From positions 1-40,254 of the forward strand of contig NW_021835426.1 in the NCBI RefSeq assembly GCF_006345805.1: a DNA stretch of 40,254 nucleotides, in the 5' to 3' direction. A program made the translations under genes and the position numbers. The stretch is from Octopus sinensis (Eukaryota). Every line of letters starts with the position of its first letter. Within the stretch, counting starts at the first letter, position 1. Below are positions 4,636 through 37,826 of the stretch, piece after piece. Below the pieces are notes generated by a model. The model ran no database searches, had not been told where the DNA came from, and saw only the letters and a program-made list of their open reading frames with translations.

Positions 4636-4926
4636 TCCAAAAGGATGAAGGGCAAAGTCGACCTCGGCGGAATTTGAACTCAAAGTGTAACGACGGGCGA
4701 AATACCTATTTCTTTACTACCCACAAGGGGCTTAACACAGAGGGGACAAACAAGGATAGACAAACGGATTAAGTCTATTATATCGACCCCAGTGCGTAAC
4801 TGGTACTTATTTAATCGACCCCGAAAGGATGAAAGGCAAAGTCGACACGGGGGAAATTTGAACTCAGAACGTAAAGACAGACGAAATACCGCTAAGAATT
4901 TCGTCCGCTGTGCTACCGTTTCTGCA
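4636..4926 (-). mobile_element. SINE family B with a 184-bp tandem unit
   Basis: AAGGATGAA..GCAAAGTCGAC at 4641 and 4825. Confidence 0.85.
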
Positions 4927-5735
4927 TACACACACATACATACATATATATAATGCATACGTACATACACACACGCATACATACATGCATACGCACACAC
5001 ATACATACTTACATGTATACATACATACATACATTCAATACATACGTGCATACATACATACATACATACATACATGCATACATACATACATATATACATG
5101 CATACATACATACATATATACATGCATACATACATATATACATGCATACATACATACATATATACATGCATACATACATATATACATGCATACATACATG
5201 CATATATACATACACACACATGCATACATACATACAAACATGCATACATACACACACCTACATACATACATACATACAATACATATATAATACAATACAT
5301 ACATAAAATACATACATACATACACACACATGCATACATACACACACATGCATACACACACACACACATACATACATACACACACATACATACAATACAT
5401 ACAATACATACATACAATACATACATACATACACATACATATATACAATACATACATGCATACAATACACACATACATACACACACATGCATACATACAC
5501 ACACATACATACAATACATACACACATACATACATACATACATACATACATACATACATAACATACATACACACACACATGCATACATACACACACATAC
5601 ATACAATACATACACACATACATACATACATACATACATACATACATACATACATACATACATACTCACACACACATACATACATACATACATACATACA
5701 TACATACATGCATGCATGCATGCATACATACGTAC
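4927..5735. repeat. ~0.8-kb degenerate (CATA/TACA)n satellite
   Basis: Direct reading; it is the source of the long MYVC/HTYI pseudo-ORFs. Confidence 0.95.
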
Positions 5736-6199
5736 ACACAACAAGGACCATCCCGTCAGTCTGTCTATATTTATAACTACGTCATCTGACCTATAGAGTG
5801 TTGTTGTCTTGACTAAGATCTTCGCTTGTACCACTAACCTATGATTAAACATTTTGCAGCTATGTCCCATGAACATATATCCCCCTTACAGGCACAGTCT
5901 ATCTAGAATTACACCATTTAATGTGTAGCGTAATTACTGTGGTTATTATTAAGCCCTGGGTTAGTTTTCAAACAGCAAATATTCCAATCATTTTTTCTGG
6001 CACACATTCAAAGTGGAGAGGTATAAGTTGAGGGTGAATTGTCTGCTATTTTTAGTAGGTCAACACTATCATGCTTCTTTATATAACACTATATACTGAG
6101 TCTATATTATTAAATGTGTCCTTTATTCCAAGGTGTTAAGTTTAGTTTGATTTGAGGGAGCAACGGCGGAATGAGCTACCGCACAGAGCTTCCTTTGCC

Positions 6200-9391: not shown

Positions 9392-9625
9392 TCTTTTACT
9401 CGTTTCAGTCATGGGACTGCGGCTATGCTGGTGCAATGTGATAAAGGACTTTTATTCGAGCAAATAGACCCTTTGTGCTTCTATCTTTTTGTAAAATATC
9501 GTCCTTCTATCGGGTCCTTTGCTCAACTGCTATGTTACGGTGTGGTAAATAAACCAACACCAAGCGGAATCGGGGACAAATACAATGAAACACACTCACA
9601 CACACACACACACACGCACAAAAGC
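9392..9625 (-). mobile_element. SINE family A, degenerate 3' half
   Basis: TTTTACTCGTTTCAGTCATGGGACTGCGGCTATGCTGG matches the family tail. Confidence 0.7.
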
Positions 9626-11235: not shown

Positions 11236-11243
11236 TTCACATA

Positions 11244-11645
11244 TCTCTTTACTCTTTTACTTGTTTCAGTCATTTGACTGCGGCCTTGCTGGAGCACCGC
11301 CTTTAAACGAGCAACTCGACCCCGGGACTTATTCTTTTGTAAGCCCAGTACTTATTCTATCGGTCTCTTTTGTCGAACCGCTAAGTAACGGGAACATAAA
11401 TACACCAGCATCGGTTGTCAAGCAATGTTGGGGTGACAAACACAGATACACAAACACACACACACGCATACACATATATATACATATATACGACGGGCTT
11501 TTTTCAGTTTCCGTCTACCAAATCCACTCACAAGGCTTTGGTCGGCCCGGGGCTATAGCAGAAGACACTTGCCCAAGAAGCCACGCAGTGGGACTGAACC
11601 CGGAACCATGTGGTTGGTAAACAAGCTACTTACCACACAGCCACT
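11244..11645 (-). mobile_element. SINE family A, full length
   Basis: Reverse complement of the 20995-21416 family from head to tail. Confidence 0.85.
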
Positions 11646-11719
11646 ATGAACGTAGAAAGCAGGTTCATAAAGAAAACGACAACGAAAGCAACAATAGAAA
11701 TAATTCTATCTTTATATAG

Positions 11720-15753: not shown

Positions 15754-17231
15754 TATGTTTGACTTTTGCTTTATGTTTGTACAAGTTGGCTCCAAGTCTC
15801 ACCCAGAGACCTCAAGAGACAACAGGTTGGAAGTTCACGTTGTTGTTATGCCTAGTGTGCCATATATTTGGGGTTTTTTACGTGTTGTACTAGTGAATGT
15901 CTAATAAATAAATTTAAAAAAAGCTTGTTTTAAACCTTGGGATTACATAGAGAGTATATTGCGTAGGATATGAGCAGTTCCCACGAGCACTATCTTTTGA
16001 ATTTCTGCCATTTTTGGGTTTCCTGGTATCTGAGTTAGGTGGCAATCAGCCCCTTTTGCTATCATTCCCAGGGTACCTATGACAACAGGTATTGTATTAG
16101 TCTTTAGGTTCCACATTTTGCTGATTTCTATTTCAAAATCTTTATATTTGCTCAGTTTTTGGTAGGTCTTGACAGATACGTTTATATCGATTGGGACAGT
16201 CATATCAATGAGGAGGCATGTTCTTTGTCTGAAGTCTTTCAATATGATGTCTGGCCTATTTGCATCTATCTTTCTGTCAGTTTGAATGGTGAAGTTCCAG
16301 AGGAGTGAGATGTGATCATTTTCAAGCACTGGAGGTGGTTTGTGTTCCCATCAGTTTTTATCATGGGGCAAATCCAGGTTTTTGGAAATTACCCAGTGAA
16401 TATATTTTGCAGCTCTATCATGCCTATTGAGGTACTCTGTAGGCGCTAGAAGACTGCACTTGGAGACAACATGATCAATGGTTTCATTTTGTTGCCGACA
16501 TACACGACATGTTGGGCTACTGCCGTTCTTTAATATGTTGGCCTGGTAGTTTCTTGTTGGTAGGCATTGATCTTGAGCTGCTATGATAAACCCCTCTGTT
16601 TCAGATTTTAAGCCAGCGGCCATTAGCCATTGATGGGTCAGGGCTTTTCAATATCTGCATTATTCGCTCTCTTTGGGTATTTGCCATAGAGAGGTTTTTC
16701 TTGCCATTTATTATTCAGAATATCTAAGGCCGCAGTTTTGGCACGGGTTTTCATGAGCTTAGCTTTTTCTGTGCTTGTTTCTTGTATGTCAATCTCTAAT
16801 TCCGAAATTTGTTGTATTCGGAATTCACTTAGATATTCCTTTGTCTGTTTTGTTACTGAGTATGATGCTTTCTTGTTTTCATGTTTTGAGCCAAGTTTTA
16901 ACATCCAGTCCTCAGACTTTTTCAGGTAGGTGTCTAGGCCAATTGTAGCAATCTTCATTGTTATTGCCAGTTGTAAAAGTCCACGGCCTCCCTCTTTTCT
17001 TGGCAGATAAAGTCGTTCTGTATCTGCCTTAGGGTGGTGCATTCTATGCATTGTCAACAGTTTTCGTATTTATCTGTCGAGATGACATATTTCAGTAATT
17101 GACCAGTTAACGATATTGAAACTGTAAGTCACGACTGGTATGGTTAATGCATTGATCGCTTCAACCCTGTTTCTTGCATTCAGCTCTGTCTTGAGTATTG
17201 CTCTCACTCTTCGATAACATTCTCTCCTGAG
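15754..17231 (-). mobile_element. 5'-truncated R4/Dong-type non-LTR retrotransposon (RT thumb, CCHC knuckle, restriction-like endonuclease, 3' UTR)
   Basis: RVEAINALTIPVVTYSF; LYLPRKEGGRGL; LKSETEGFIIAAQDQ; CRVC..ETIDHVVSKC; RHD; RPDII..D..K..KY. Two in-frame stops and one frameshift. Stop at 15943-15945, ~190-nt 3' UTR, (TAA)n on both flanks. Confidence 0.9.
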
Positions 17232-17335: not shown

Positions 17336-17952
17336 TATGTTTGACTTTTGCTTTATATTTGTACAAGTTGGCTCCAATTCTCACCCGGAGACCTCAAGAG
17401 ACAACAGGTTGGAAGTTCACGTTGTTGTTATGCCTAGTGTGCCATATATTTGGTTTTTTATTTAGTGTTGTACTAATGAATGTCTAAAAAAAAGAATGTT
17501 TGTTTTAAACCTTGAGATTACATAGAAAGTATTTTGCATAGGATATGAGCAGTTCCCGTAAGCACTATCTTTTGAATTTCTGCCATTTGGGGATTCCTGG
17601 TATCTGAGTTAGGTATCAATCAGCCCCTTTTGCTATCATTCCCAGGGTACCTATGGCAATAGGCATTGTTTTAGTCTTTAGGTTCCACGTTTTGCTGATT
17701 TCTATTTTAAAATCTTTATATTTGCTCAGTTTTTGGTAGGTCTTGACAGATACGTTTATATCGATTGGGACAGTCATATCAATGAGGAGGCATGTTCTTT
17801 GTTTGAAGTCTTTCAATATGATGTCTGGCCTATTTGCATCTCTCTTTCTGTCAGTTTGAATGGTGAAGTTCTAGAGGAGTGAGATGTGGTCATTTTGAAG
17901 CACTGGAGGTGGTTTGTGTTCCCACCAGTTTTTTCATGGGGCAAATCCAGGT
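17336..17952 (-). mobile_element. Second, shorter 5'-truncated copy of the same R4/Dong-type element
   Basis: Same 3' terminus (..GTCAAACATA), 3' UTR and RLE segment (KDFKQRTCLLIDMTVPIDINVSVK) as 15754-17231, with (TAA)n on both flanks. Confidence 0.9.
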
Positions 17953-18367: not shown

Positions 18368-18421
18368 ACCAAAGCCTTCTGAGTAGATTTGGTAGACGGA
18401 AACTGAAAGAAGCCCGTCGTG

Positions 18422-18480
<59 letters not shown>

Positions 18481-18728
18481 TGTGTGGTGTGTGTGTATGT
18501 TTGTGTATGTATATCTTTGTGTGTCTGTGTTTGTCCCCACAACATCGCTTCGCAACCGATGCTGGTGTGTTTACGTCCCCGTAACTCAGCGGTTCGGCAA
18601 AATAGCCGATGGAATAAGTACTAGGCTTCCAAAGATTAAGTCCTGGGGTCGATTTACTCGACTAAAGGCGCTGCTCCAGCATGGCCACAGTCAAATGACT
18701 GAAACAAGTAAAAGAGTAAAAGAGAGAG
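18368..18728 (+). mobile_element. SINE family A, 5' head missing
   Basis: Starts at ACCAAAGCC..GATTTGGTAGACGGAAACTGAAAGAAGCCCGTCG and runs to the family tail. Confidence 0.85.
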
Positions 18729-20808: not shown

Positions 20809-20994
20809 TTATTTTCAATTTATTTAAATTGAAGCAAATACAATGCAAACCAGGGTAAGCGGATAATATAGTAACTAAAGGTTTAAAGGGATCCACATTA
20901 CAACCTTGCATGTAAGATTTTAACCTGATTCATGTCCTAAGCTCTAGCTTAGTAACGACGCTACCTTTACCTAAATTCTTCGATATTTTTCACA

Positions 20995-21198
20995 GGCGCA
21001 GGAGTGGCTGTGTGGTAAGTAGCTTGCTTACCAACCACATGGTCCCGAGTTCAGTCCAACTGCGTGGCATCTTGGGCAAATGTCTTCTGCTATAGTCCCG
21101 GGCCGACCAATGCCTTGTGAGTGGATTTGGTAGACGGAAACTGAAAGAAGCCTGTCGTATATATGTATACATATATAATATTATATATATATATATAT

Positions 21199-21230
<32 letters not shown>

Positions 21231-21416
21231 CATATGTGTTTGTGTGTCTGTGTTTGTCCTCCTAGTATTGCTTGGCAACCGATACTGGTCAAGTACGATA
21301 GAATAAGTACTGGGCTTACAAAGAAAACGTCCCGTTGTCGATTTGCTCGACTAAAGGCGGTGCTCCAGCATGGCTGCAGTCAAATGACTGAAACAAGCAA
21401 AAGAGTAAAAAGAGTA
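20995..21416 (+). mobile_element. tRNA-headed SINE family A, full length
   Basis: A-box-like TGGCTGTGTGGTAAG, B-box-like GAGTTCAGTCC, CORE-like CTTGGGCAAATGTCTT, internal (TA)/(TG) tract, and tail CCAGCATGGCTGCAGTCAAATGACTGAAACAAG + (AAAAGAGT)n. Confidence 0.85.
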
Positions 21417-22930: not shown

Positions 22931-24036
22931 CTTATTTTAGCAGCAGAAAATTCAACAAAATCTGTTACTCTGAGTTTCTCGTTGCCGTTCATCAGACAGT
23001 TTTTGCTAGAATGGAACTTATATATTAATTCAATCTATACTCTTACAAACGCTACACCTTTAAAAAGAAATGGACTTGTTTGATTGGCCCTTTAGAAAAA
23101 CGGTCAATCTTCGAGCGATAAACAAAAAGGTCAAAAATATATGTATATATATATAAAAAAACTTATAAAATTATAAAAATTATAAAATCCGAGGAAAAAA
23201 TCGAGGAAAAAACCTATTGCCGTTAATGAAGACAGTACAAATTAATGCATAGAAATTAAACCTGTTATAAATACTGCAATCATATTTATATTAAAATCCA
23301 CATATATATATCAACATACACAAAAGGATGCGCGTAAACGCCATACATACATATACAGACGTATGAATATGAATCTAAATTATACACATAAAAGCATGTG
23401 TACATATATTCACGCAAACCGTCTCGCACGCAAGCTAAAATTCATCTATGTAGCAATTCTCATATACTGAGCAAGGAGGGGGAACGAAAGAAAGGGAAAG
23501 AGAGAAAAAGGAATGAAGGAGGGGTGGGGAAAAACTTGTAGCGATGTTATTGGCATCTATAGAGGCCAGTATACATACACAAGTTTGAATTGATACATAT
23601 ACATACCGTCGTGTGTATGCGTGCTTAAGCACAAGCATACTTTCACTTACACATACACAGATACGCATGCTTACAATACATATGCTTTGCTATACACATA
23701 CTTATATAAACATTCTAATTTTGACAACATTGCTTTTTTTAAAAAAACATTGCTTTTAAAAAATGGGTGCATTAATAAAAATATATACGAAAGACATATA
23801 AAATAAAATGTAACATCCTATTTTGGGTCATTTATAAATAATCAAGGTAATATAAATAATCAAGGTAATCCTATGCAATACAATAACATGAAAACAAAGT
23901 TTGTAGGTTTTTCCTAATATATATGTAGAAACAATAAGATTTTGCTATAGATCCGTCGTAGCGCTCAAGAGTCAAAATCAAAATCAAAAATCAAAATACA
24001 AAATATATACTCTATCCATATGGTATATTTATATTC
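22931..24036 (-). repeat. Left inverted arm (inverted copy of the PLE 3' UTR/pLTR)
   Basis: Reverse complement of 26015-27075 plus a 45-nt insertion at 23777-23821. PLE-like sequence continues about 70 nt further out, to ~22861. Confidence 0.92.
22962..22999 (-). ncRNA. Minimal type I hammerhead ribozyme (mirror copy)
   Basis: Exact reverse complement of the 38-nt motif at 27005-27042. Confidence 0.8.
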
Positions 24037-26016
24037 GACGGATTTTTCTCAGAAAAATATACCTATCCCTGCACGGAAACAATATATCAAACGTCTTATA
24101 GAGAAAACGGAAGAGTTTATTAGAAGACTGAGATGGAAAGCCTTCTTCTTTGATAATAAACAGAAAATAGAAGGTAACAAATATGGATTTAAATCTCCCA
24201 GAAACCCGCCACCGATTCCGGAATTAGAAGCCTTCGAGAAAGACCTTTTCGAGCTTATGGAAATTAAATTCCGCAAATATACCAACCAATTGCAAAAAAA
24301 CATGAGAGAAAAAATTAAGGAGATTAACGACTCGAATAAGATCTTCGTTAATTCTGACAAGACAAGGAACTTATATGCACTTGATAAGGACGTTTATAAA
24401 CGCCTGATTTCGAATAGTGTCACGGACACATACAAAAAAGACAACACGAATATATACAAAGAGGTGAACTTAGAAGCAAGAGGAATAGCTAACGATCTTA
24501 AGATTAGCGATAGGATTGAATACCTTTCACCACGACCAGCTTTTATTACTCTGAAAGATCATAAAGACAATTTTAGTAGAAACCCCAAATGTAGATTGAT
24601 AAATCCGGCTAAAACTGAGATAGGAATTATTAGCAAAAATATTTTGGACCGTATTTTAGTTAAGTTAGATAGTGAAGTAGACTTGAGAATTTGGAAGAAT
24701 AGTAAGTCAGTTATAGAGTGGTTTAAAGGTATTAGCTATAAGAATAATTGTAGTTTCACACAATTCGACATTATTGACTTTTACCCGTCGATATCTAGGA
24801 CGTTGCTCCTAAGAAGACTGAGGATTCTCTTTTCGATGTACCGATGGGGGCATACGACGGGGCTGAATTATGTATGCTCATAGGAGCCTTTATTCTCCAT
24901 AATCTAAAAATAGAATTCCCATTTATAGATGCAGGTCTATATAGGGATGACGGCCTTATAGCCACGCATAATCTAAACGGCCATGAATCAGATAGACTTA
25001 GGAAGGACCTATAGCTTTCTTTCAAAGGATGGGCTTACGGATTACGATAGATGCTAACCTGAATAGTGTAGATTTTTTAGACGTAAATTTTAATGTAAGA
25101 TCGGATAGATTTAAGCCTTTCCGTAAGCCCAATGAAAAGCTATCGTATATTAGCAAAGATTCGAACCATCCACCAGTTATCCTTAGCAACTTAGTCAGCA
25201 ATGTAGGTAGAAGATATATCTTCAATTTCTTCGGTCGAGGCAGCATTCCATAATGCTGCACCTTATTACGATAGCGCATTAAAGAATAGTGGATTCTCGG
25301 AGAAGATCCAGTTCAACCAGCTTAATGCTAATAATAATGCTGCACGAGAACTAGGACCAGGAAGTTTTTGTGGTTCAACCGGCTTTCAATTGGCCGAAAG
25401 ACTAATATAGGTAAGGAATTTTTGAGATTAGTCTCTAAGCATTTTAAGCAGGGTCATAAATTCTACAGAATATTTAATAGAAGAACCCTGAAGGTAGCTA
25501 TTCTTGTTGCAGAAATTTCGCCTCTTACATTAGCCAACATAATAGGAAGCTAATTGAGATTAGACATGGTGCCGAGCCCATTAAGAAATGTAATTTCAAA
25601 AACGAAAGCTCCTGTCCGTTTAGAAGGGAAATGTCTAGTGAAAGGAGTAGTTTATAGAGCCAAGGTGCAAGTGGAAGGCTCATCGGAATACAAGACATAC
25701 ACAGGGGCTTCAGAAAATTCATTTAAAACAAGATTTTATTCTCATAAGATTCTTTTAAATACCCAGAGAATAGGAAGAAAACCAGCCTAGCAAATATGTC
25801 TGGGAACTTAAAGAAAAGGAAGCCCCACCTTTCAACGTGACATGGAGCATTCTGGACAGGGCGGCACCATACAGGCATGGAGCTTACAAATATAATTTCA
25901 AGTGCAGGCTTTGCTTATTAGAAAAATGCACATCTTATTCAAAGACAATAATTCTTTGAATCAAGAGAAGTGAGTTAATGAACTTATGTAGGCACGCGGC
26001 TAAATTTAAAATGTGA
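24020..26016 (+). pseudogene. PLE polyprotein (reverse transcriptase + C-terminal GIY-YIG endonuclease), broken by about ten 1-bp indels and one larger deletion
   Basis: Hand translation across frames: KNIPIP..RLRWKAFF..GFKS..DKT..FDIIDFYPSI / FDVPMGAYDGAELC..GLYRDDGL / DFLDVNF..NHPP / WFN..KTNIGKEFL / YSC..CNFKN..CP/LEGKCL..VVYRAKV..YTG..FKTRF..H / W..L..CRLCLLEK..CRHAAKFKM*. The YRDD catalytic motif is intact, and TGA is at 26014-26016. Confidence 0.92.
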
Positions 26017-27075: not shown

Positions 27076-28504
27076 TATATATATATATATATATACATAT
27101 ATTGATATATATATATACATATATATATATCGGTATTCTTATATTTATATGTACACATACACATATACTTGCATATATGCATATATGCATACATTGATAC
27201 ATACATACGTACATACATATATATATATATATACCTACGTACATATATATACACATTACGTACATATATATATATACACATATATATATACATATTTATA
27301 TAATACATTGTCACACATATATTCTATTCGCCACAGCTCTTCTATCACCATCGATACCCATGTCTAGACATCTCGACTACAATTCTTAGGTATACCTCCA
27401 CCGACCCTAAATCAGAGACTATCCTCAAACACTTTCCCAAACGACTTCCACTTCCACACATTCTAACTACAACACCATCCTCAACTACGGCACAAACACG
27501 AGCACTAGCGCAATCAACAATGGTAGAAATAATATCAACATCACTCACATCTTCACAGCATCCTCTTCACCAACAGCAACAGCATCATCTTCACCAACTC
27601 CAACACACCTATCATTATTGCCAACAACAACAACGGCCTTTTTTTACAGTAACAATGTCAGTGCAACGTGACCATGAAGGATTGCTACACCCGTTTCAAA
27701 ACGAACAACAATAACTATCATCATCATTTTCATCATCGTCGTCGTCGTCGTTCTCATCGTCATGGTCATCGTCATCATCATCAGCACCACTACTGCCAAC
27801 AGTAGTGGTGTAACATCCTTAACACCACTGTCACCACCATAATCACCATCACCACCACCATAATCACCACACCACCACTATCACCACCATCACCACCACC
27901 AACACCATCATTACCCTCACCACCACAACCATCACCATTATCACAAGCGCCACTACAACCACCACCACTATTATCACCATCTCGACCAACCACCACCACC
28001 GCCTCCATCACCATCATCTCCACCACCACCATCGCCTCCACCACTGCCGCCGCCGCCACCGCCACCACCACCACTATCAACAATATGATATATATATATA
28101 TATCTCTGGCACCACTTACAACACCATCAACAAGAGTAACCTCACAACAAACCACTTAAACCTTTGTCATTGCTGCAGGTCAACTACACAGACTTTATTC
28201 GGTCTTTGAATTTGCTGGAGAGTGCAGCCAAATACATCTGAAATCTAACGAAGACATCATCTTAAGTAAAGAACACATTGATAATATAATACCTGCTAAC
28301 TTATACTTTTCTCCCATTTGCTTGTTAGAGTCATGAAACTGCGGCCATACTGGAGCACCATCTCGAAGATTTTAACTGTTTAAATCGATCTCAGTTTGCT
28401 TATTGAAATGCTGCTATTTATTCGGTCGAAGCCTTTTGGACGAGTTCATCCAGGCCGATTGATTTTTAGGGTATCAACGGTTCGATCCGATCCTTAGAAA
28501 TGAA

Positions 28505-28714
28505 ATGAGGGGCTACACACAGAGGGGACAACCAAAGACAAAGGGATTAAGTCGATTATATCGACCTCAGTGCGTAACTGGTACTTATTTAATCGACCCC
28601 GAAAGAATGAAAGGCAAGGTCGACCTCGGCGGAATTTGAACTCAGAACGCAGCGGCAGACGAAATACCGCTAAGCATTTCGCCCGGCGTGTTAATGTTTC
28701 TGCCAGCTCGCCGC
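28505..28714 (-). mobile_element. SINE family B monomer
   Basis: Complete head (..TGCCAGCTCGCCGC) and centre, reverse complement. Confidence 0.85.
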
Positions 28715-29421: not shown

Positions 29422-30069
29422 AGCAGAAACAGCTTGAAACAGTGTGACAAGAGTGGACAAGCCGTACAGAAATATACCTCCTTGATTCAGTCTGCTCACC
29501 CAATTTCATTCACAAGAAACAGTTCCAGTAGGGAATGAAGAAACTGATGTTTGCCAAAGATGCGAAGCAATGGGATCGAAGCCGACAGATCTACTTTGCT
29601 AAGCGATTTTCTTAACCATTCGGTCAATCGTCGTTTAGATAAAACTACAACTGGGAAAATTCATCGTCGATAAAGACGGAAAGCCGCTTGCTCATTTTAT
29701 GTATGCATGAATCTATGTTCATATGAAAATCGGCTGCACTTTTGTTAACCTTATATAACAAAAGACGAAATCGCTACGTCAATAATAAGAAAAACCTCGA
29801 AGCGGAACGGCGAGCGATGTCTTAGCTGATCTGTTTGCTCCGGCTTACGTTGATAGATATGTGTATGTCCGTGTATCAGTGTACGTATGTATATACATAT
29901 ATATGTATATGGCTGTGTGTACGTGCATACAGGTGTATGTGAGTGTGTGTGTGAGTACGTATATGTATGCATTCCTGATGGTGGAGTGCATTAATTTAGG
30001 CTGGTAATCTTATAACAGTTCTTATAATGTGTTATGTGTATCTGGACGTGTCGATCTGTCTATATATAC

Positions 30070-30107
<38 letters not shown>

Positions 30108-30259
30108 CTATATATATATATATATATATATATGTGCGTGTGTGTGTGTGTAAATACATTTATATATATATATACATATACATATATATACATATATACA
30201 TATATATATATATACATATATGTATATGTACATATATATATATACATATATGTATATGT

Positions 30260-30324
<65 letters not shown>

Positions 30325-30945
30325 TATACATGCATATGTGTGTGTGCTTACCTATGTGTTTGTTTGTAAGCGTATGTAGGTTTTTGAAACTGTCCGAGTA
30401 GTGTATATGCGTATTCATGTTTGTGAGTGTACGCTTAATCAGGACGGATATGTAGCAAATAGGTACGAAATCACCAATAAGTATGCGTGCGCTCGACGTG
30501 TTAATCTGTGTGTATAAGTGCGTGCATTTATGTATACGCATATATACATGCATATATATACACACACAGATATATACACACACACATACATGCCTATATA
30601 CATATATTTAAATATATATATGTTTGTATGTATATTTATATATACATATATATATATATATTATATATCTATTCACACACATACACTCTCTCACTCATAC
30701 ATACATATATATGTCTGCATGTATATATATATATATATGTACATATTATATTATATATCTATTCACACACACACACACACTCACACACACACACTACCTC
30801 ACTCACTCACACACATATATGATTGTGTATTCGCATATTCAGATGAGTACAGTTACGTGTACAGGTATGTGTGTTTCGTGTTTGTTCGCGAACGCCTATT
30901 CAAGTTAGAAATTTAAACTACTTATTATACAGGCAGAATAAATGC

Positions 30946-34677: not shown

Positions 34678-34820
34678 TTCGGCATAAGAGACCGATAGAA
34701 TAAGTACTGGGCTTACAAAGAATAAATCCCGGGGTCGATCTCCTCGACTAAAGGCGGTGCTCCAGCATGGCCGCAGTCAAATGACTGAAACAAGTAAAAG
34801 AAAAGAAAGAAAGAAAGAAA
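34678..34820 (+). mobile_element. SINE family A, 3' end
   Basis: GAGACCGATAGAATAAGTACT..CCAGCATGGCCGCAGTCAAATGACTGAAACAAG + (AAAG)n. Confidence 0.85.
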
Positions 34821-35805: not shown

Positions 35806-36056
35806 CTTTTACTGTTTTACTTGTTTCTGTCATTTGACTTTGGCCATGCTGGAGCACCGCCTTTAGTCGAGCAATTCGATCGCAGGACTTATTCTTTGGA
35901 AGCCTAGTACTGATTCTGTCGGTACTTTTTGCCGAACTGCTAAGTTACGTATACGTAAACACACCACCGTCGGTTGTCAAGCGATGTTGGAGGGACAAAC
36001 ACAGACGTACAAACACACACACACACACACAACACACACACACACACAAACATATC

Positions 36057-36109
<53 letters not shown>

Positions 36110-36274
36110 TAGACGGGCTTCTTTTGGTTCCGTCTACAAAATCCACACACAAGGCTTTGGTGAGCCCGAATCTTTAGTAGACTACACTTGTCCAAGGTGC
36201 AACGTAGTGGGAATGTCCCCGGAATCACGTGGTTGGTAGGCAATCTTCTTAACAACACAGCCACTCCTACGCCT
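35806..36274 (-). mobile_element. SINE family A, full length
   Basis: Same head, body and tail as 20995-21416. Confidence 0.85.
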
Positions 36275-36307: not shown

Positions 36308-36341
<34 letters not shown>

Positions 36342-36415
36342 CTATAATTATATATATATATCATATATATATATACATATATACATAGATAGATATGTAT
36401 GTATATGCATGTATA

Positions 36416-36464
36416 TCCTTAAAATCCTTTAAAATGTTTTAGACCGAAGGCCGCGGCCATGCTG
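36416..36464 (-). mobile_element. Retroposon (LINE/SINE-type) 3' tail fused to the U6 copy
   Basis: CAGCATGGCCGC-GGCCTTCGGTC-TAAAACA-TTTTAAAGGA-TTTTAAGGA. The first 12 nt are identical to the SINE family A tail in this window (e.g. ~34763-34774), followed by a hairpin and short terminal repeats. Confidence 0.75.
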
Positions 36465-36566
36465 AAAAAATATGGAACGCTTCACGAATTTGCGTGTCAT
36501 CCTTGCGCAGGGACCATGCTAATATTCTCTGTATCGTTCCAATTTTAGAATATGTACTGCCGTAGC
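36465..36566 (-). pseudogene. U6: U6 snRNA retrocopy lacking ~6 nt at the 5' end
   Basis: Minus strand reads GCTACGGCAGTACATATTCTAAAATTGGAACGATACAGAGAATATTAGCATGGTCCCTGCGCAAGGATGACACGCAAATTCGTGAAGCGTTCCATATTTTTT. It has 5 substitutions versus the canonical human U6 as I recall it. The ACAGAGA box and AGC triad are intact. Confidence 0.95.
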
Positions 36567-36655
36567 TATATATATACGTCTGAGACCCAGACATATATAC
36601 AGAGCGCAAGCATTTACATACATATGAGTACACAAACACACATACACTCACACAT

Positions 36656-36730
<75 letters not shown>

Positions 36731-37583: not shown

Positions 37584-37639
37584 ACTCACACATACACAAG
37601 CACATGAATCTATGAGTATATCCATGTATATGTATATAG

Positions 37640-37668
37640 ATAGATAGACAGACAGAGAGACACATAGA

Positions 37669-37708
<40 letters not shown>

Positions 37709-37728
37709 TAGACAGACAGACAGATATG

Positions 37729-37802
<74 letters not shown>

Positions 37803-37826
37803 TAGATAGATAGATAGATAGATAGA
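37640..37826. repeat. (GATA)n/(GACA)n microsatellite
   Basis: Direct reading. Confidence 0.95.

What the first reader, a model, noticed from the sequence alone, without database searches (positions are those of the whole stretch)
36416..36566. U6 snRNA fused directly to a retroposon 3' tail: a U6 chimera or U6-headed SINE in an invertebrate
Seen: a near-full U6 ending in T6 is joined with no spacer to a 49-nt tail (CAGCATGGCCGC + hairpin + AAACA + TTTTAAAGGA/TTTTAAGGA repeats), all inside a TA-rich microsatellite, with no clear TSD. Known: U6/L1 chimeras with the junction at the U6 terminal U-tract exist in mammals (template switching or RtcB ligation), and crocodilian SINEU elements have U1/U2 heads. 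I do not know of a described U6 fusion to this kind of tail in molluscs. Inference: U6 was captured by the LINE machinery that mobilises the local SINEs. Identical junctions at many loci would indicate a new snRNA-headed SINE.
Basis: partly seen in the sequence, partly recalled or inferred. Interest (0 to 1): 0.8.

Follow-up and report, generated by a model that had tools for sequence, protein, structure and literature searches.

The report
U6 pseudogene fused to retroposon tail
A decayed copy of the spliceosomal U6 RNA sits fused end-to-end to the last 49 bases of a SINE/LINE-type retroposon in what looks like an octopus genome. This is most likely a one-off by-product of retroposon copying, a kind already described in platypus and lizard, not a new mobile-element family.

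Summary
On the minus strand, U6 nt 7-107 (36566..36466; Rfam 99.7 bits) ends in T6. It abuts, with no spacer, a 49-nt tail (36464..36416). The tail's first 12 nt are identical to the conserved 3' block of the window's abundant SINE. The next 18 nt match that SINE tail 10/18 in register (p about 0.01). Both tails end in two short tandem units, but the hairpin and the repeat unit differ, so the tail comes from a sister lineage, not from the local SINE.

The best reading is a chimeric retropseudogene. Mature U6 RNA was joined at the RNA level, by template switching or ligation, to the 3' end of a stringent-type LINE or SINE RNA, and the product was inserted by that LINE's machinery. The missing TSD is normal here: local SINE copies lack clear TSDs too.

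The U6-headed SINE reading is disfavoured. The T6 between head and tail is a Pol III terminator, and U6 promoters lie upstream of the gene. It could not be tested, because none of the reachable collections holds cephalopod DNA.

U6 chimeras with L2, RTE and their SINEs are already published for platypus and Anolis. This is therefore a new member of a known kind; a mollusc case was not found in the held literature.

The parts
36465..36566 (-). U6 snRNA-derived segment: U6 nt 7-107 plus one extra T. It is 5'-truncated by 6 nt and has 5 substitutions, so it is a pseudogene.
   Evidence: Rfam RF00026 99.7 bits. Alignment 96/101 to human U6, window 36566..36466.
36465..36470 (-). T6 tract: the native U6 oligo-U 3' end, which is also a Pol III terminator. 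The junction lies immediately 3' of it.
   Evidence: Sequence read directly and alignment end.
36453..36464 (-). CAGCATGGCCGC: conserved 12-mer of the retroposon 3' module. In the SINE it forms the 3' half of hairpin 1; the 5' half is absent here.
   Evidence: 8 sites at most 1 mismatch versus 0.02 expected. All the others lie in SINE tails. SINE hairpin 1+2 fold -18.1 kcal/mol, z -3.8.
36441..36452 (-). GGCCTTCGGTCT: 12-nt element at the position of SINE hairpin 2 (AGTCAAATGACT). It forms only a weak hairpin.
   Evidence: In-register comparison. Fold -3.3 kcal/mol, z -0.15, against -6.0, z -4.25 for the SINE version.
36435..36440 (-). AAAACA linker, corresponding to GAAACA in the SINE tail.
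36416..36434 (-). Two terminal tandem units, TTTTAAAGGA and TTTTAAGGA. They sit at the position of the SINE's two GTAAAAGA units and are the presumed priming site for reverse transcription.
   Evidence: TRF period 10, 2.2 copies. Unique in the window.
35806..36273 (-). Context only: a complete local SINE (tRNA-like head, internal (TA)n(GT)n, body, common tail) 142 nt downstream on the same strand. It is a separate insertion.

Best explanation
This is a chimeric, dead-on-arrival retropseudogene. A mature U6 snRNA, ending in its oligo-U tail, was joined at the RNA/cDNA level to the last 49 nt of a retroposon RNA. That RNA was a 'stringent' LINE, or a SINE that borrows the LINE's 3' end. Its tail module is 12-mer, hairpin, AAACA and short tandem repeats, and it is a sister of the tail carried by the window's SINEs.

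Inferred sequence of events:
- The LINE reverse transcriptase primed on the terminal repeats at a nicked target.
- It copied the tail up to the loop of the first tail hairpin.
- It then continued on U6, either by jumping to the U6 3' end (template switch, my slight preference) or because U6 had already been ligated to a cleaved tail RNA (RtcB-type ligation).
- It stopped 6 nt short of the U6 5' end.

The copy has since picked up about 5% substitutions, and microsatellites have grown around it. It has no function.

Shown here: the anatomy, the junction position and the homology of the tail. Inferred: the joining mechanism and the LINE involved.
For: The U6 part ends exactly at its natural 3' end and the tail starts at the next base, in the same orientation. 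The tail's first 12 nt are identical to the conserved SINE-tail block. The next 18 nt match 10/18 in register, p about 0.006-0.01. Both tails then end in two short tandem units. The hairpin differs at 7 of 12 positions, whereas U6 differs at 5 of 101 and the 12-mer at 0 of 12. The tail is therefore a distinct lineage, not a decayed local SINE tail. The tail module is shared by more than one SINE body (copies at 28341 and 9419), as expected for a LINE-derived recognition module. An Octopus vulgaris transcript carries a further variant with a compensatory stem change, CAGCC-UAAU-GGCUG. Local full-length SINEs also show no clear TSD, so the missing TSD is the norm for this machinery. The published platypus and Anolis U6 chimeras have the same hallmarks: 5'-truncated U6, a short LINE or SINE 3' piece, and tiny or no TSD (PMC4476161).
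Against: Only one locus was available. No element carrying this exact tail was found: there is none in the window and none in a 400-kb O. vulgaris transcript excerpt. No TSD or empty orthologous site proves a single insertion event. The hairpin of this tail is not better than random. Similarity beyond the 12-mer is modest.
Confidence: 0.68

Rival explanations
1. Two independent events. A U6 pseudogene (retrocopy or DNA-duplicated gene copy) already lay here, and a heavily 5'-truncated copy of a LINE or SINE later inserted right after its T tract, or the reverse order.
For: 5'-truncated SINE copies exist in the window, for example 34690-34810 and 18368-18720. The region is a retroposon and microsatellite hotspot. 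No TSD brackets the whole unit. A T-rich tract might attract the endonuclease.
Against: This requires base-exact abutment of a truncation point to the U6 3' end, in the same orientation. That is roughly one position in tens of thousands per insertion, whereas the chimera model predicts it. No duplication of the U6 3' end follows the tail, as a TSD from an insertion at that site would give.
Confidence: 0.14
2. A U6-headed SINE: the unit is one copy of a multi-copy family whose master copies are transcribed and mobilised through the LINE-type tail. This would be analogous to the crocodilian SINEU elements with U1/U2 heads.
For: The architecture (small-RNA head plus LINE-type tail with terminal repeats) is that of a SINE. 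By Kojima's argument (PMC4494074), independently made chimeras imply many parent copies with the same tail, and none is seen in this window. However, 40 kb is too small to count. Meeting one such unit in a single 40-kb window hints that such units may not be rare.
Against: T6 between head and tail is a Pol III terminator, so a Pol III transcript from the head would stop before the tail (established knowledge). snRNA genes have upstream promoters and no internal one is reported (PMC4494074; the same point for U6/L1 is made in PMC6789731). The junction deletes the 5' half of tail hairpin 1, which is kept in all 9 SINE tails of the window. No second copy was seen anywhere that could be searched. 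Those searches are nearly uninformative, because they hold no cephalopod DNA.
Confidence: 0.08
3. The 49 nt are ordinary flanking DNA downstream of a degenerate U6 gene or pseudogene, and the resemblance to a retroposon tail is chance.
For: The tail's hairpin is not significant. A TATA-like run lies about 25-30 nt upstream of where U6 nt 1 would be. Outside the 12-mer the identity is only 56%.
Against: An exact 12-mer at the very first base of the tail has a chance of about 6e-8. The 12-mer occurs in the window only in SINE tails. The in-register match of the following 18 nt has p about 0.01. Terminal tandem units sit at the same offset. The U6 lacks its first 6 nt and has 5 substitutions in an otherwise near-invariant RNA, so it is not a working gene.
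Confidence: 0.05

Closest known systems
U6 chimeras with stringent LINEs and their SINEs: platypus U6/L2 and U6/Mon-1; Anolis U6/L2, U6/RTEX-2 and U6/AnolisSINE2 (Doucet et al. 2015, PMC4476161)
   Same: U6 in sense orientation joined to a short 3' piece of a LINE or SINE that ends in simple repeats. U6 is usually 5'-truncated. TSDs are tiny or absent. Poly(A) is absent. The published interpretation is template switching by a non-L1 reverse transcriptase.
   Different: The host is a mollusc, not a vertebrate. The source element and its LINE clade are not identified here. Only one locus was seen.
Mammalian U6/L1 chimeric pseudogenes (Buzdin 2002; Moldovan et al. 2019, PMC6789731)
   Same: The junction lies exactly at the U6 terminal oligo-U, and the 3' partner is a 5'-truncated retrotransposon. 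The copy is not expected to be transcribed as a unit.
   Different: In L1 chimeras the partner is poly(A)-tailed, U6 is usually full length, and clear TSDs of 7-20 bp are present. Here the tail is a structured module with tandem repeats, there is no poly(A) and no TSD, and U6 lacks 6 nt.
SINEU: crocodilian SINEs with U1/U2 snRNA-derived heads (Kojima 2015, PMC4494074)
   Same: An snRNA-derived 5' part plus a retroposon-type 3' part. Template switching is the proposed origin of the head.
   Different: SINEU is a proven multi-copy family with subfamilies and master copies, and its heads are U1/U2, not U6. Here there is a single copy with a terminator between head and tail, and no family evidence.
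Octopus tRNA-derived CORE-type SINEs (OK, OR1, OR2 of Ohshima and Okada 1994; names seen in the RepeatMasker output of PMC9115989)
   Same: The window's SINE is tRNA-like-headed, about 470 bp, and very abundant. It carries the tail module whose 12-mer heads the U6-linked tail.
   Different: The U6-linked tail has another hairpin and another repeat unit.
Hairpin-plus-short-repeat 3' ends of L2/CR1-type LINEs (for example UnaL2, Kajikawa and Okada 2002; cited in PMC4476161 and PMC4758252)
   Same: A stem-loop followed by a few short tandem units, which the reverse transcriptase recognises and primes on. This is the same layout as the tail module here.
   Different: Resemblance of layout only. 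No LINE with this tail was found, and an RTE-type partner is equally possible.

Membership tests
U6/LINE(SINE) chimeric retropseudogene | Sense-oriented U6 sequence that ends at the native oligo-U 3' end | tested here: met
   Rfam model positions 1-105 matched. U6 nt 7-107 plus an extra T, giving T6.
U6/LINE(SINE) chimeric retropseudogene | Direct junction, same orientation, to a 5'-truncated 3' end of a LINE or of a SINE that uses it | tested here: inconclusive
   Abutment and orientation are met. The tail shares 12/12 and then 10/18 nt and the layout with the local SINE tail. However, the actual source element with this hairpin and repeat was not found.
U6/LINE(SINE) chimeric retropseudogene | Target-site duplication around the whole unit | tested here: not met
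   No flanking direct repeat at the boundaries. Local SINE copies also lack clear TSDs, and published L2/RTE chimeras have TSDs of 0-9 bp, so this feature is weak for this class.
U6/LINE(SINE) chimeric retropseudogene | Both parts arrived in one event (empty orthologous site lacks both) | not testable with these tools
   No cephalopod genomes are in any reachable collection.
snRNA-headed SINE (SINEU-like family) | Many copies sharing one head-tail junction, with subfamilies | not testable with these tools
   One copy in 40 kb. The external searches are blind to cephalopods: the antisense ORF of the window's abundant SINE finds only 1 protein in 5.8 billion.
snRNA-headed SINE (SINEU-like family) | A way to transcribe the whole unit, head through tail | tested here: not met
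   T6 at 36470..36465 lies between head and tail. U6 and other snRNA promoters are external (PMC4494074; PMC6789731).
snRNA-headed SINE (SINEU-like family) | Complete LINE-recognition tail | tested here: inconclusive
   Hairpin 1 is cut in its loop and its 5' half is missing. The hairpin 2 equivalent is weak. The terminal repeats are present.
Functional U6 snRNA gene | Intact 5' stem-loop and invariant core | tested here: not met
   nt 1-6 are replaced by TATATA. Substitutions are T10A, C17T, A24T, G49T and C60T. Non-canonical pairs are marked in the 5' stem of the Rfam alignment.
Local SINE family (same subfamily as the window's copies) | Tail identical, apart from decay, to GGCGGTGCTC-CAGCATGGCCGC-AGTCAAATGACT-GAAACAAG-(TAAAAGAG)n | tested here: not met
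   The 12-mer is 12/12, but the hairpin block differs at 7/12, the repeat unit is different, and the upstream GGCGGTGCTC is absent.

The most novel reading that the evidence does not exclude
The unit is one member of a cephalopod-specific, multi-copy U6-headed retroposon family, or of a very prolific stream of U6-tail chimeras. Pol II read-through or a downstream-tolerant Pol III would transcribe it. It would be the first U6-derived SINE head and would catch SINE birth by template switching in the act.
Probability: 0.07. Interest if true: 0.6.

Novelty: new member of a known kind. Interest (0 to 1): 0.3.

Why it matters
If confirmed as a single-event chimera, this locus extends U6 capture by non-L1, tail-recognising LINEs from vertebrates (platypus, lizard) to a lophotrochozoan. 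That would support the view that jumping or ligation onto U6 is a general property of LINE retrotransposition. The same process is the one proposed to give SINEs their LINE-derived tails. The locus also flags a second tail lineage of the octopus SINE/LINE system that is absent from the rest of this window. Its practical value is modest: it is a marker for past activity of an unidentified octopus LINE.

Tried and rejected
(1) Exact-pattern scans for the junction (variable T run) returned nothing in metagenome, prokaryote-genome and viral collections. The tail 21-mer hit only GC-rich bacterial coding DNA. A general tail pattern hit two bacterial MAGs by chance. The common SINE tail, used as a control, returned nothing in viral contigs.

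(2) 'ORF hack'. The U6 sense frame is open and reads into the tail (...REAFHIFSAWPRPSV*). I therefore searched the 5.8-billion-protein collection with U6-plus-tail peptides for all T-run registers, and also for the common SINE tail. There were 1877 U6-derived ORFs, including ORFs in which the U6 frame runs on into unrelated peptide sequence, but none had this junction. A calibration with the antisense ORF of the window's abundant SINE found a single protein. The collection therefore lacks cephalopod ORF calls, and these negatives carry no weight.

(3) An exact look-up of a window ORF to locate the source assembly found nothing on record.

(4) Pfam on the window's LINE-like ORFs gave no hits. 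The LINE fragment at 15943-17057 ends in (AAT)n and is not the partner.

(5) A tail-like match inside that LINE's coding region (16597-16623) was judged to be chance.

(6) I looked for the tail and the junction in the O. vulgaris transcriptome excerpt held as a supplement of PMC9115989. Both were absent; only 400 kb is held, and matches across line breaks would be missed.

(7) I considered the idea that the tail is a second, degenerate U6 fragment, because U6 itself contains AGCATGGCC. I rejected it: similarity stops after about 20 nt, and the SINE-tail match is exact and in register.

(8) The prediction that the U6 3' end substitutes for the missing half of hairpin 1 is not better than shuffles (z +1.4).

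Full report
WHAT IS THERE. The only Rfam family above gathering score in the 40-kb window is U6, on the minus strand at 36577..36466 (99.7 bits, E 7e-25). A permissive Rfam pass added only microsatellite-driven miRNA look-alikes, and no tRNA genes were found. Aligned to human U6 (sequence from my own memory), the window carries U6 nt 7-107 at 36566..36466 with 96/101 identity (T10A, C17T, A24T, G49T, C60T) and one extra T, giving T6 at 36470..36465. The first six U6 bases are replaced by TATATA, so the 5' stem is broken. This is a pseudogene, not a working gene.

The next base starts the 49-nt tail, read on the minus strand:
- CAGCATGGCCGC (36464-36453)
- GGCCTTCGGTCT (36452-36441)
- AAAACA (36440-36435)
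- TTTTAAAGGA (36434-36425)
- TTTTAAGGA (36424-36416)

An (AT)n array follows at 36312-36406, and an (AC)n array lies upstream at 36630-36718.

WHAT THE TAIL IS. The 12-mer occurs 8 times in the window with at most one mismatch, against 0.02 expected. The seven other sites, plus two more diverged ones, all lie in the 3' tail of an abundant SINE. The consensus tail reads ...GGCGGTGCTC CAGCATGGCCGC AGTCAAATGACT GAAACAAG (TAAAAGAG)2.

The full SINE is composite: tRNA-like head, internal (TA)n(GT)n, body and tail. One complete copy lies at 36273..35806 (minus strand), 142 nt downstream of the U6 unit. In the SINE the tail folds into two hairpins (-18.1 kcal/mol, z -3.8). The 12-mer is the 3' half of the first hairpin. 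The second is CAGUC-AAAU-GACUG (-6.0 kcal/mol, z -4.25). The same module sits on at least two different bodies (copies at 28341 and 9419). An Octopus vulgaris transcript in the supplement of PMC9115989 has a variant with a compensatory stem change, CAGCC-UAAU-GGCUG (-8.7 kcal/mol). This is the behaviour of a LINE-derived recognition module.

The U6-linked tail shares the following with the SINE tail:
- the 12-mer, 12/12;
- the next 18 nt, 10/18 in register (p 0.006-0.01 by three estimates);
- two terminal tandem units at the same offset.

It also differs. The hairpin block differs at 7 of 12 bases and the repeat unit is different, while U6 next to it has diverged by only 5%. It is therefore a sister tail lineage, not a decayed local SINE tail. 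Its own hairpin is weak (-3.3 kcal/mol, z -0.15). No second copy of this variant exists in the window.

THE JUNCTION. U6 ends at its natural oligo-U end. The tail begins in what is the loop of hairpin 1 in the SINE (UC|CA), so the 5' half of that hairpin is missing. No direct repeat brackets the unit. The full-length SINE copies in the window also show no clear TSD, so absence of a TSD is normal for this machinery and does not argue against retroposition.

MECHANISM. The most economical reading is a chimeric retropseudogene. A LINE reverse transcriptase primed on the terminal repeats of a LINE or SINE RNA and copied 49 nt. It then continued on mature U6 and stopped 6 nt before the U6 5' end. 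Continuation could occur in two ways:
- by jumping to the U6 3' end;
- because U6 with a 2',3'-cyclic phosphate had already been ligated to a cleaved tail RNA with a 5'-OH, as shown for U6/L1 by Moldovan et al. (PMC6789731).

One locus cannot separate the two routes. I lean slightly to template switching, which is also how Doucet et al. read the L2 and RTE cases. A break in a hairpin loop is compatible with either route.

The independent-insertion rival needs a base-exact, same-orientation coincidence and leaves no TSD of the U6 end.

The SINE-family rival faces three problems. First, T6 between head and tail would stop Pol III. Second, snRNA promoters are external (PMC4494074; PMC6789731). 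Third, the first tail hairpin is incomplete.

COMPARISON WITH WHAT IS KNOWN. Doucet et al. 2015 (PMC4476161) describe 40 platypus chimeras of U6 with L2 or the SINE Mon-1. Almost all have a 5'-truncated U6 upstream of a short L2 piece, and TSDs are only 1-9 bp. They also describe Anolis chimeras with L1, L2, RTEX-2 and AnolisSINE2, and possible opossum RTE cases without TSD. The present locus has the same hallmarks. Kojima's SINEU elements (PMC4494074) have U1/U2 heads. The one search of the held literature made for this purpose (terms SINEU plus U6 snRNA) found no U6-headed SINE, and a separate search found no mollusc U6 chimera. RepeatMasker output for O. vulgaris transcripts names the octopus SINEs OK and OR2 (tRNA-Core class). 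The window's SINE is probably one of these, but I could not test that.

WHAT COULD NOT BE DONE. The decisive test is to count junction copies in cephalopod genomes and find the element that owns this tail. It is out of reach here. The junction pattern found nothing in metagenome, prokaryote-genome or viral collections. The tail pattern hit only bacterial genes. Peptide queries that read through U6 into the tail found 1877 U6-derived ORFs but none with this junction. The control showed why: the antisense ORF of the window's abundant SINE finds one protein in 5.8 billion, and the SINE tail is absent from viral contigs. These collections hold essentially no cephalopod DNA, so the negatives say nothing about copy number.

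VERDICT. The chimera interpretation is supported by the anatomy. The SINE-family interpretation is unsupported and mechanistically disfavoured, though untested. The finding is a new taxonomic instance of a known phenomenon, and its interest is modest.

Noticed in passing
window 36273..35806 (-); other copies about 11660..11240 (-), 20988..21410 (+), 18368..18720 (+, 5'-truncated); tails also at 9419, 13810, 28341, 34763, 40051: An abundant composite SINE: tRNA-like head, an internal (TA)n(GT)n microsatellite as an integral part, a body, and a two-hairpin tail ending in about two GTAAAAGA units. No clear TSDs. ARAGORN does not recognise the heads as tRNA.
   Followed up: partly
window 28341..28540 (-) and 9419..9620 (-): The same tail module (GGTGCTCCAGYATGGCCGC, hairpin, AACAAG) is attached to bodies that differ from the main SINE. 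This suggests several SINE families share one LINE partner.
   Followed up: partly
window 36507..36520 (-) versus 36453..36464 (-), and all SINE tails: U6 itself contains AGCATGGCC (here AGCATGGTC), the same 9-mer as the core of the retroposon 12-mer. A shuffle test gives p about 0.02. It is probably chance, but it could matter for pairing or microhomology during chimera formation.
   Followed up: partly
window 15943..17057 (-), with a second partial copy at 17616..17816 (-): A LINE-like C-terminal region (CRVC...H...C zinc knuckle, NRPDI motif) broken into three ORFs, followed by a 3' UTR ending in (AAT)n. There is no Pfam hit. It is not the partner of the SINE tail. A duplicated C-terminal fragment lies 1.3 kb upstream.
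   Followed up: partly
window 24020..24883 (+): A 287-aa ORF that looks transposon-derived (lysine-rich; the motif FDIIDFYPSI is present) but has no Pfam match. It is not on record in the gene-position index.
   Followed up: partly
window-wide, e.g. 4680..5876, 30030..30920, 37636..37826: Very dense microsatellites, (AT)n, (AC)n, (ATAG)n and CATA-type arrays up to 1.2 kb, produce long spurious ORFs. They also produce dozens of sub-threshold Rfam hits to mir-297, mir-466, mir-3149 and mir-1277. All of these are artefacts.
   Followed up: yes
PMC9115989 supplementary file 3 (O. vulgaris transcripts): Transcripts ending in antisense SINE tails include a variant hairpin AGCCTAATGGCT. It has a compensatory U-A to C-G change relative to AGTCAAATGACT, which is evidence that the second tail hairpin is under structural selection.
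   Followed up: partly
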